A DNA stretch of 63,064 nt, filler included, from Octopus bimaculoides (lineage: Eukaryota), in assembly GCF_001194135.2 (NCBI RefSeq). It is 6 parts of 6 records of this genome, joined end to end, with 100 filler letters (N's around TTAATTAATTAA, not from the genome) between each part and the next. Parts side by side here need not be neighbours in the genome. Positions count along the whole stretch, not along the records: positions 35,000 to 42,081 come from NC_068989.1; 5 more parts are not named here. One strand, written 5' to 3'. Shown here one piece after another: positions 40,380-41,351 of the stretch (positions within the stretch are counted from its first letter, which is position 1; each line of letters begins with the position of its first letter). A model generated the notes under the pieces. It was not told the DNA's origin. It worked only from the letters and a program-made list of their open reading frames with translations, and made no database searches. The translations under genes were made by a program, and so were the position numbers.

Positions 40380-41351
40380 TTATCCGTAGCTGAAAACTAA
40401 ACAATCATAAACTTCTGCGAGTGATTTTAGGCAGTCAAATAAAACGTTGATGTTGCGTGCTTCATTTTCATTTTCGGCTAAATCGAAGAGGAGGCTTCGT
40501 ATTATTGTAGAATCTTCTTCGGTGCACCAATTCAGCATAGAGCAATAGTTTGAATCACCTTTTCGACCAAAGCGCTGAATTATGTTCTTTGAGAAAGTGG
40601 CATGTTCCTCAAAGATGTATCCATGCTTATGCAAATAGAGGAATACCCGAAGAAAACGTCTTAGAATGCGGAGAACTTGTTGTCTGGTCATTATGCTTTT
40701 GGACGTGTTGTTTTCTATCAAATAGTTGCAGTTCTGTAGTAAAACATCAAGAAAATCTTGTACCGACGCAGTATATCTTGTTAGGACCCTGTCCGTAACG
40801 AGTTTAAGAATGCGACTATCGAGTTGATAAGCTATCTCACCAAACAATTTTTCCTTATCGCTGGTGTTAAGTTGATGGTTCCACTTTATCATAGCATCCA
40901 GACAATCGGAGAGGACTAACGCATTAGCTCTCTCTTCATCGTCTTCGGCAACGTCACTGATCAAGAATTTTAAGTGATCTGGGTCGTGCCGTGCACAGAT
41001 TCTAGCAATAATATAATATTGATTTGAAGGCGGAAGACCGTATTTAGAAACCATGTGCCGTGAAAACGGCCCGTGGATATCTACGGAATATCCGTAATTT
41101 CTCAGTAGAAAAAGCACCTCCATCAGTCGGATGAAAACTCTGCGAATGATAGAGGAACCGAAGTGCTTACACATTCTTTTGTTGTCGAGGTAAAGTAATC
41201 GTAGGAGCGACATCACGTCTGAAAACTGTTCGAGATCTCTATGTAAACCCGATATGGAATGTAAACGTATCCGTTGGTCGAGCTGGTGTGCGATTTCTGC
41301 TATAAGTGGGCGCCATTCTTCGAAGTATTCTTCAGATGCAGCCAAGAACAT
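40380..41351 (-). CDS. intronless 323-aa protein with two tandem Speriolin_C-like domains (SPATC1/SPATC1L family)
   Basis: Only long complex ORF in the window. Repeat 1: EIAHQLDQRI(19)..GYSVDIHGPFS(87)..DCL(149). Repeat 2: GEIAYQLDSRIL(171)..GY...EH..FS(244)..DCL(306). Both match the recalled speriolin C-terminal motifs GEIAFQLDRRIL / GY..D.H..FS..L...YG / LL.CL..L. Confidence 0.88.
   Translation of the reverse strand: MFLAASEEYFEEWRPLIAEIAHQLDQRIRLHSISGLHRDLEQFSDVMSLLRLLYLDNKRMCKHFGSSIIRRVFIRLMEVLFLLRNYGYSVDIHGPFSRHMVSKYGLPPSNQYYIIARICARHDPDHLKFLISDVAEDDEERANALVLSDCLDAMIKWNHQLNTSDKEKLFGEIAYQLDSRILKLVTDRVLTRYTASVQDFLDVLLQNCNYLIENNTSKSIMTRQQVLRILRRFLRVFLYLHKHGYIFEEHATFSKNIIQRFGRKGDSNYCSMLNWCTEEDSTIIRSLLFDLAENENEARNINVLFDCLKSLAEVYDCLVFSYG

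What the first reader, a model, noticed from the sequence alone, without database searches (positions are those of the whole stretch)
40380..41351. Intronless protein built from two tandem Speriolin_C-like domains and nothing else
Seen: an internal repeat with 153-157-aa offset and three aligned motifs in each half; an in-frame TGA 15 nt before the ATG rules out an N-terminal extension within this exon. Established: vertebrate speriolin (SPATC1) and SPATC1L have an N-terminal coiled-coil region plus one C-terminal domain; they are sperm centrosome / head-tail junction proteins, and the speriolin C-terminus was reported to bind Cdc20. Inference: a lineage-specific double-domain paralogue lacking the coiled coil, a candidate cephalopod sperm-centriole component. 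I do not know of this architecture being described.
Basis: partly seen in the sequence, partly recalled or inferred. Interest (0 to 1): 0.75.

Follow-up and report, generated by a model that had tools for sequence, protein, structure and literature searches.

The report
Octopus protein with two speriolin domains
This is a real, strongly conserved cephalopod gene whose 323-residue protein is two back-to-back copies of the domain found once at the end of sperm-neck/centrosome proteins (speriolin family); the doubled layout is a modest, undescribed variant and its sperm role is still only inferred.

Summary
Window 40380-41351 (minus strand) is an intact 323-codon ORF. Each half alone passes the Pfam Speriolin_C (PF15059) cut-off (39.1 and 53.6 bits against 27). 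The halves align to each other at 30% identity (E 1e-16). A TGA lies 15 nt upstream of the ATG.

Uninterrupted orthologues of 323-337 aa exist in Octopus vulgaris/sinensis, Argonauta hians, Sepia pharaonis and one unnamed decapodiform. dN/dS is about 0.05-0.10, so this is not a pseudogene.

Among 167 Speriolin_C proteins in hand, only the nine cephalopod sequences carry two domains. The rest carry one, at the extreme C-terminus. An exhaustive scan of 1.84 billion representatives found one cluster covering both domains.

D1, D2 and a 173-aa single-domain decapodiform paralogue form one clade. The doubling therefore predates the octopus/cuttlefish split.

"Intronless" applies to the coding sequence only; a splice-acceptor-like site 46 nt upstream of the ATG suggests a 5'UTR intron. 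Lacking the N-terminal region is common in this family.

The fold (AlphaFold pLDDT 89, eight helices) matches no solved structure. A sperm-centriole role rests on homology alone.

Verdict: a new variant of a known kind, of moderate interest.

The parts
40380..41351 (-). Complete single-exon coding sequence, 323 codons plus TAA stop (stop at 40380-40382)
   Evidence: ORF list and sequence. Orthologous uninterrupted ORFs in O. vulgaris, O. sinensis, Argonauta, a Sepia-like species and an unnamed decapodiform. dN/dS 0.05-0.10.
40866..41321 (-). Speriolin_C domain 1 (aa 11-162), the only internal (non-C-terminal) Speriolin_C domain seen
   Evidence: Pfam 39.1 bits alone, aa 16-156. Own single-domain HMM matches aa 11-162. 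Retains 20 of 36 columns that are >=85% conserved in the canonical family.
40386..40862 (-). Speriolin_C domain 2 (aa 164-322)
   Evidence: Pfam 53.6 bits alone. Own HMM matches aa 164-322. AlphaFold2 model with 93-sequence alignment: pLDDT 89.3, pTM 0.86, eight helices. Retains 20 of 36 canonical columns.
41364..41366 (-). In-frame TGA 15 nt upstream of the ATG; blocks any N-terminal extension read through this exon
   Evidence: Sequence. Conserved in O. vulgaris and O. sinensis.
41352..41397 (-). 46-nt untranslated leader of the coding exon (inferred)
   Evidence: Lies between the acceptor-like site and the ATG. The O. vulgaris annotation ends another gene model's last exon inside the equivalent stretch.
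41398..41420 (-). Putative 3' splice acceptor (tttttttctcctttcgttctAG) of a 5'UTR intron (inferred, not shown by RNA)
   Evidence: A strict acceptor-like site lies at the same 46-nt distance in Octopus and Argonauta although the flanks no longer align, and at 11 nt in the Sepia-like locus. Expected 0.06-0.14 such sites per 70 nt.

Best explanation
Shown: window 40380-41351 (minus strand) is a functional protein-coding gene of coleoid cephalopods. Its 323-residue product consists only of two tandem, divergent Speriolin_C (PF15059) domains joined by about 8 residues. It has no Speriolin_N or leucine-zipper region. The two domains and a 173-aa single-domain cephalopod paralogue form one clade within the family. 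The tandem therefore arose by duplication and fusion of a short Speriolin_C-only gene before octopods and decapodiforms split, and both copies have been kept under strong purifying selection since. The coding sequence is one exon. A non-coding 5' exon spliced 46 nt upstream of the ATG is likely. Inferred: by homology with speriolin/SPATC1 (spermatid centrosome, C-terminal region binds Cdc20), with SPATC1L (spermatid neck; loss causes sperm decapitation; binds PKA regulatory subunit and CAPZB) and with the male-gonad-biased bivalve homologues, the protein most likely acts in spermatids as a small helical adaptor at the centriole and head-tail junction. Having two copies of the partner-binding module on one chain would give it bivalency without the N-terminal zipper that vertebrate speriolin carries.
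For: Two domains, each above the Pfam cut-off; internal repeat E 1e-16. Orthologues with the same layout in O. vulgaris/sinensis (98%), Argonauta hians (67%), the Sepia pharaonis cluster and an unnamed decapodiform (55%). dN/dS: 0.085 against O. vulgaris (18 synonymous, 6 non-synonymous changes), about 0.05 against Argonauta, 0.092 between the two decapodiforms; both domains are constrained alike. CDS is 97.5% identical to O. vulgaris with no indels, against 92.6% and 94.4% with indels in the flanks. Only the ORF still aligns with Argonauta DNA. Exhaustive profile search of 1.84e9 representatives: 36 hits, and only the cephalopod cluster spans both domains. Own domain HMMs on 172 proteins: two domains only in the 9 cephalopod sequences, one C-terminal domain in 158 others. 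NJ tree: D1 clade 100%, D2 clade 100%, and D1+D2+P0005 against all others 100%. P0005 and P0054 come from the same samples as the decapodiform double-domain proteins. Acceptor-like site upstream of the ATG and the O. vulgaris gene model sharing it. Family function: PMC8471410, PMC6303261. Male-gonad bias in bivalves (332-fold in Ruditapes; testis-specific in scallop): PMC3958495 and PMC12564202.
Against: There is no expression, localisation or interaction data for any cephalopod member. No paper was found. The Logan contigs look genomic, so they are not evidence of transcription. The cephalopod clade has lost several canonical features: the R-x-x-YGF(T/S)V motif and the C-terminal D...W tail. 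Each domain keeps only about 20 of 36 conserved columns, so partner specificity may have changed. The fold has no solved structural relative (best Foldseek E 0.66, TM<=0.30) and no PDB sequence relative, so structure gives no mechanistic hint. The full-length AlphaFold model was unusable (pLDDT 39), so how the two domains pack is unknown. SPATC1L has also been tied to non-sperm contexts such as hearing and cell junctions (PMC6303261).
Confidence: 0.6

Rival explanations
1. A real, conserved two-domain protein whose job is not sperm-specific, for example a general centrosome, cilium or cytoskeletal adaptor used in somatic tissues such as the nervous system.
For: Strong constraint says nothing about tissue. 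The cephalopod clade has diverged from canonical motifs. SPATC1L has reported non-testis associations (PMC6303261). No cephalopod expression data were found.
Against: Every characterised family member is spermatogenic: mouse and human speriolin and SPATC1L, and clam and scallop homologues that are strongly male-gonad biased.
Confidence: 0.25
2. A decoy or regulator. Lacking any targeting or zipper region, the tandem domain protein competes with a canonical long speriolin for partners (Cdc20, PKA-R or CAPZB-like) rather than acting as a structural component.
For: It has only the partner-binding type of domain, twice. Other molluscs have long proteins of 541-1170 aa ending in one Speriolin_C domain.
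Against: No canonical long cephalopod speriolin appeared among the named hits. Short PF15059-only proteins are common elsewhere and are presumably functional on their own.
Confidence: 0.1
3. The ORF is only the last exon of a longer protein whose N-terminal (coiled-coil) exons lie upstream, outside the piece.
For: An acceptor-like site lies 46 nt upstream of the ATG, and an O. vulgaris gene model runs into this exon from more than 10 kb upstream.
Against: The frame of the ORF is closed by TGA at -15 between the acceptor and the ATG in all three Octopus genomes. The upstream model ends at a TAG in another frame. The start codon is conserved in all five aligned proteins. The conserved YFEEWRPLI block differs between the window and the Sepia-like locus only by synonymous changes. 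Three independent annotations aa.
Confidence: 0.04
4. A young processed pseudogene or retrocopy, or an assembly artefact, with no function.
For: Single-exon coding sequence; repeats and a mariner remnant nearby.
Against: dN/dS 0.05-0.10. The ORF is intact in six assemblies spanning both coleoid superorders. Synonymous sites are saturated between octopods and decapodiforms while the protein stays 55% identical. There are no indels in the CDS while the flanks have them.
Confidence: 0.01

Closest known systems
Cephalopod 173-aa single-domain Speriolin_C protein (P0005 / P0054; unnamed, found in the same decapodiform samples)
   Same: Same divergent subclade: the D1+D2+P0005 bipartition has 100/100 support. 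It shows the same loss of the RxxYGF motif and of the C-terminal W tail. Like the double-domain gene, it is a short protein with no N-terminal region and a single coding exon preceded by an AG-ended leader.
   Different: It has one domain, not two. It was seen only in decapodiforms here; whether octopods have it could not be tested.
Speriolin-like protein / SPATC1L and short PF15059-only proteins (fish 160-290 aa, Lineus longissimus XP_064639820.1, Capitella teleta ELU01267.1, Liolophura sinensis XP_064611872.1)
   Same: Speriolin_C is the only Pfam domain. The core motifs GEIAxQLDxRI, R...L...GY...H..F, YG and CL are shared.
   Different: They carry a single domain that ends at the very C-terminus with ...DGxPxFxW. 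They keep the R(K/R)xYGF(T/S)V motif (the 'RLYGFTV' of human SPATC1L, PMC6303261). The octopus protein has two domains, one of them internal, and both motifs are degenerate.
Speriolin / SPATC1 (mouse, human; reptile and amphibian orthologues with PF15058 + PF15059)
   Same: The C-terminal domain family is shared. In mouse speriolin this region is described as the Cdc20-binding region (PMC6303261). [quoted passage not shown]
   Different: SPATC1 has an N-terminal Speriolin_N / leucine-zipper region, which is absent here, and only one Speriolin_C domain.
Long molluscan Speriolin_C proteins (Saccostrea cucullata XP_062579837.1 1170 aa, Pinctada, Argopecten, Mytilus, Dreissena, Haliotis, Gigantopelta)
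   Same: These are the nearest named non-cephalopod relatives by profile score. Bivalve 'speriolin' transcripts are strongly male-gonad biased.
   Different: They have 541-1170 residues of N-terminal sequence before a single terminal domain. The octopus protein has no such region and a doubled domain.

Membership tests
Speriolin_C domain family (Pfam PF15059) | Match to the PF15059 profile above the curated gathering score (27 bits) | tested here: met
   Whole protein 85.1 bits. Half 1 alone scores 39.1 bits and half 2 alone 53.6 bits. Orthologues P0002, P0003 and paralogue P0005 also pass.
Speriolin_C domain family (Pfam PF15059) | Conserved core residues of the domain (GEIAxQLDxRI helix, R...L...GY...H..F, YG, CL) | tested here: met
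   20 of 36 columns that are >=85% conserved in 89 canonical sequences are kept in each of D1 and D2, including the Q, L, R, GY, H and L columns, which all ten cephalopod D1/D2 sequences keep (alignments).
Speriolin_C domain family (Pfam PF15059) | R(K/R)xYGF(T/S)V..NI motif after the first helix | tested here: not met
   Degenerate in D1, D2 and the 173-aa paralogue: columns 205-219 and the alignment.
Speriolin_C domain family (Pfam PF15059) | Domain placed at the extreme C-terminus, ending ...DGxPxFxW | tested here: inconclusive
   In 158 single-domain proteins the domain ends a median of 0-5 residues from the C-terminus. D2 is terminal but ends ...YDCLVFSYG without the D...W columns. D1 is internal.
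Speriolin proper (SPATC1) | N-terminal Speriolin_N (PF15058) / leucine-zipper region | tested here: not met
   No PF15058 hit even at E<=10, and only about 10 residues precede domain 1. Vertebrate speriolins carry PF15058+PF15059.
Speriolin proper (SPATC1) | Binds Cdc20; localises to the spermatocyte/spermatid centrosome | not testable with these tools
   Known only from mouse and human work cited in PMC8471410 and PMC6303261.
SPATC1L (speriolin-like) | Spermatid-neck localisation; loss gives acephalic sperm; binds PKA-R and CAPZB | not testable with these tools
   Literature only. No cephalopod data were found.
Testis-biased expression (family-wide trait) | Transcript enriched in male gonad | not testable with these tools
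   Shown for clam and scallop homologues.
Processed pseudogene / retrocopy | Relaxed constraint (dN/dS near 1), frame disruptions, lineage-restricted | tested here: not met
   dN/dS 0.05-0.10; the frame is intact in six assemblies from octopods and decapodiforms.

The most novel reading that the evidence does not exclude
Coleoid cephalopods have rebuilt the speriolin system. They use a private clade of short Speriolin_C-only proteins in which a covalent tandem of two domains replaces the zipper-mediated pairing of vertebrate speriolin. They may have lost the long canonical form altogether. This would make the protein a lineage-specific core part of the cephalopod sperm head-tail junction or centriole.
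Probability: 0.15. Interest if true: 0.5.

Novelty: new variant of a known kind. Interest (0 to 1): 0.35.

Why it matters
Speriolin_C is a poorly understood domain. It has no solved structure and no detectable structural relative, yet loss of one human and mouse member (SPATC1L) causes headless sperm. A natural, strongly conserved protein made only of two such domains is a compact object for structural and binding studies: it has no disordered N-terminus, and AlphaFold models one domain confidently. It also shows that the domain can function away from a free C-terminus. For cephalopod biology it is a candidate sperm-neck or centriole component that can be tested with existing RNA-seq and proteomics. 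It does not overturn anything, because domain duplication inside a known family is a common evolutionary event.

Tried and rejected
1. AlphaFold2 of the full-length protein with the 5-sequence orthologue alignment gave pLDDT 39 and pTM 0.26. It is unusable for judging how the domains pack.

2. Foldseek of the confident D2 model against the PDB gave a best E of 0.66 and TM <= 0.30, so there is no structural analogue.

3. A profile search of PDB sequences gave a best E of 0.055 (COP9 subunit 3), which is not significant.

4. I tried to use the Logan contigs as evidence of transcription. They start in microsatellites and keep the acceptor-like sequence, so they look genomic and the evidence was rejected.

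5. I tried to find a canonical long-form cephalopod speriolin. Candidates P0106, P0118, P0089, P0006 and P0009 come from unrelated, unnamed samples, so the question stays open.

6. I searched for a neighbouring paralogue within +/-10 kb of the gene in five genomes and found none.

7. tRNA and Rfam scans of the piece found nothing.

8. Goto & Eddy 2010 and Kim et al. 2018 are not held in the library, so their findings are cited second-hand from reviews.

9. The pseudogene, artefact and N-terminal-extension readings were considered and rejected, as set out under the rival explanations.

Full report

Yes.
- The piece carries an ORF on the minus strand at window 40380-41351: 323 codons, ATG at 41351-41349, TAA at 40382-40380.
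- hmmscan against Pfam-A gives Speriolin_C (PF15059) at 85.1 bits, E 6e-24, in two stretches. Nothing else is significant, and there is no Speriolin_N hit even at E<=10.
- The halves searched separately both pass the curated cut-off of 27 bits. Residues 1-162 score 39.1 bits (aa 16-156, profile positions 1-139 of 148). Residues 163-323 score 53.6 bits (profile positions 2-139).
- BLASTP of one half against the other gives 30% identity and 49% positives over 145 columns, E 1e-16.
- The in-frame TGA 15 nt upstream of the ATG is there, at window 41364-41366.

**2. Is it a gene?**

The word-indexed protein search found four clusters with the same length and layout:
- Octopus vulgaris / O. sinensis, 98% identical
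- Argonauta hians, 67%
- a cluster that includes Acanthosepion (Sepia) pharaonis CAE1308711.1 / UniProt A0A812DWT5, 337 aa, 55%
- an unnamed decapodiform from ENA sample ERZ21867824, 55%

Evidence that these are functional orthologues:
- In the alignment 116 columns are invariant, spread over both halves.
- All genomic copies are uninterrupted ORFs.
- Nei-Gojobori dN/dS is 0.085 against O. vulgaris (18 synonymous and 6 non-synonymous differences), about 0.05 against Argonauta (synonymous sites near saturation) and 0.092 between the two decapodiforms. Both domains give similar values.
- Against O. vulgaris the CDS is 97.5% identical with no indels. The 483-nt upstream flank is 92.6% identical and the 693-nt downstream flank 94.4%, and both flanks have indels.
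- Against Argonauta only the ORF still aligns at the DNA level, window 41328-40379.
- The conserved N-terminal block YFEEWRPLI differs between the window and the Sepia-like locus only by synonymous changes, so the 5' end of the ORF is coding.

By similarity the window is from an Octopus species close to, but not identical with, O. vulgaris/sinensis (dS about 0.09).

**3. How unusual is the architecture?**

- A profile of the five orthologues was scored by HMMER against all 1.84 billion representatives. It gave 36 hits at E<=1e-3. Only the cephalopod cluster matched across both domains. Every other hit matched one half, near the end of the target.
- A single-domain HMM built from the ten cephalopod halves confirmed this: two domains in the five cephalopod proteins, one in all the others.
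- A third search with a mixed domain alignment retrieved 507 family members, of which 120 were listed.
- Across all 172 proteins then in hand, two independent domain HMMs found two domains only in the nine cephalopod sequences. The 158 others had one domain, ending a median of 0-5 residues from the C-terminus.
- Domain 1 of this protein is therefore the only internal Speriolin_C domain seen.

Named relatives are all single-domain:
- bivalves: Saccostrea 1170 aa, Pinctada 575, Argopecten 762, Mytilus 619, Dreissena 1094
- gastropods: Lottia, Gigantopelta, Haliotis
- a chiton (Liolophura 265 aa, 'speriolin-like'), a nemertean (Lineus 202 aa) and an annelid (Capitella 189 aa)
- vertebrates

Many family members are short and carry PF15059 only, such as fish speriolin-like proteins of 160-290 aa. 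The absence of the N-terminal coiled-coil or Speriolin_N region is therefore not unusual in itself. The doubling is the new feature.

**4. Origin**

- In a neighbour-joining tree of 43 domains (100 bootstraps), all D1 form a clade (100%) and all D2 form a clade (100%). D1 + D2 + P0005 are separated from every other domain (100%). The position of P0005 next to D2 is unresolved at 43%.
- P0005 is a 173-aa protein with one Speriolin_C domain (51 bits). It comes from the same sequencing runs as the Sepia-like double-domain protein.
- Its 82%-identical relative P0054 lies on another contig of the same ENA sample as the other decapodiform double-domain gene.
- So decapodiforms have both a single-domain and a tandem form of a cephalopod-specific subfamily. 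The tandem predates the octopod/decapodiform split.
- Whether octopods keep the single form, and whether any cephalopod keeps a long canonical speriolin, could not be settled. Candidates traced to unrelated samples, and no paralogue lies within 10 kb of the gene.

The subfamily is divergent.
- Of 36 columns conserved at >=85% in 89 canonical sequences, each cephalopod domain keeps 17-22. The window's D1 and D2 each keep 20.
- The GEIAxQLDxRI, R...L...GY...H..F, YG and CL positions are retained.
- The R(K/R)xYGF(T/S)V..NI motif and the terminal D...W are lost. That motif is the 'RLYGFTV' of human SPATC1L, in which a deafness-associated variant was reported (PMC6303261).

**5. Gene structure**

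The coding sequence is a single exon in every genome. 'Intronless' as a statement about the gene is doubtful, for three reasons.
- A polypyrimidine tract followed by AG (tttttttctcctttcgttctAG, window 41420-41398) lies 46 nt upstream of the ATG.
- A site passing a strict definition (>=12 of 15 pyrimidines, no internal AG) lies at the same 46-nt distance in Argonauta, where the flank is otherwise unalignable, and 11 nt upstream in the Sepia-like locus. Such sites are expected 0.06-0.14 times per 70 nt. Weaker AG-ended tracts precede the ATG in the other decapodiform locus and in both single-domain loci.
- The O. vulgaris annotation has a 153-aa gene model on the same strand whose last exon ends at a TAG 22-24 nt upstream of the ATG. 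This implies transcript evidence for splicing into this exon.

Because TGA at -15 closes the ORF's frame downstream of the acceptor, such an upstream exon cannot add residues to the protein in Octopus.

**6. Structure**

- With only five orthologues AlphaFold2 failed on the full protein (pLDDT 39).
- Domain 2 alone, with a 93-sequence alignment, gave a confident model: pLDDT 89.3, pTM 0.86, eight helices.
- Foldseek against 350,542 PDB chains found nothing. The best hit had E 0.66, with TM 0.15-0.30.
- A profile search of PDB sequences was also negative.
- The fold therefore gives no mechanistic lead.
- The inter-domain junction is short, with HMM envelopes ending at 162 and starting at 164. 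Close packing of the two domains is plausible but unproven.

**7. Function**

All of this is inference.
- SPATC1L sits at the spermatid neck. Its knockout decapitates sperm, and it associates with the PKA regulatory subunit and CAPZB (PMC8471410; PMC12901780).
- The conserved C-terminal region of mouse speriolin is described as the Cdc20-binding region and the N-terminus as a leucine zipper (PMC6303261).
- In bivalves 'speriolin' transcripts are strongly male-biased: 332-fold in Ruditapes, and testis-specific in scallop (PMC3958495, PMC12564202).

From this I infer a spermatid centriole or neck adaptor whose two domains give bivalency on one chain. No cephalopod expression or localisation data were found. 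No paper combines speriolin with cephalopods, none mentions PF15059, and an Octopus maya testis transcriptome paper does not mention it.

**8. Verdict**

The architecture, the selective constraint and the lineage restriction hold. 'Intronless' and 'lacking the coiled coil' need qualification. The sperm-centriole role is an untested homology inference.
- The proteins are already in public databases under automatic names, but the tandem architecture appears undescribed.
- This is a new variant of a known kind, of moderate interest.

Noticed in passing
window 41646-41999 (+ strand): Decayed mariner/Mos1-type transposase N-terminus (Pfam HTH_48, 59 bits) with an internal stop. It lies antisense to the speriolin-like gene, about 300 nt upstream of its ATG. 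The alignment with the O. vulgaris locus only starts at window 41834, so part of it is not shared at this position.
   Followed up: partly
L001 1-9977 (O. vulgaris OX597822.1), equivalent to window 41373 and upstream: The O. vulgaris annotation has a 153-aa gene model with no Pfam hit on the same strand. It spans more than 10 kb and its last exon ends at a TAG 22-24 nt before the speriolin-like ATG. It may be an upstream ORF called on the 5'UTR exons of the same transcript or a read-through. O. sinensis and Argonauta annotations lack it.
   Followed up: partly
window 40233-40262: (CA)15 microsatellite 118 nt downstream of the stop codon, longer in O. vulgaris. No AATAAA or ATTAAA was found within 1080 nt downstream of the stop on the gene strand, so the 3' end of the transcript is undefined.
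   Followed up: partly
window 38824-38953: Run of 130 N (assembly gap) inside the piece.
   Followed up: no
window 36739-37000, 37266-38458, 39277-39424, 41989-42081: Interspersed repeat families with many copies, in both orientations, in the 20-kb O. vulgaris and O. sinensis loci. 37500-38120 contains several partly overlapping copies of one family.
   Followed up: no
L004 9950-10000 (ENA ERZ21867824 ctg118158l): The called start of P0004 is probably too far downstream. An in-frame ATG 51 nt upstream gives MEESADHQNCPLISTQS..., matching the Sepia N-terminus MEESTSDHNNQQLSIQS.
   Followed up: partly
L007-L011 (P0005 / P0054): Decapodiform cephalopods carry a 173-aa single-domain Speriolin_C paralogue on a different contig from the double-domain gene. 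It is also a single coding exon preceded by an AG-ended AT-rich tract 11 nt before the ATG.
   Followed up: yes
L003 20837-20972 (Argonauta hians): The nearest annotated neighbour in Argonauta, about 10 kb downstream on the opposite strand, is an 830-aa RasGAP with C2, PH and BTK domains. No neighbour lies inside the window piece.
   Followed up: no
L016 / L017 (P0006, Logan): In an unnamed organism a 183-aa Speriolin_C ORF is preceded about 340 nt upstream by a 194-310-aa ORF on the same strand. This may be a long canonical protein split by the gene caller.
   Followed up: no
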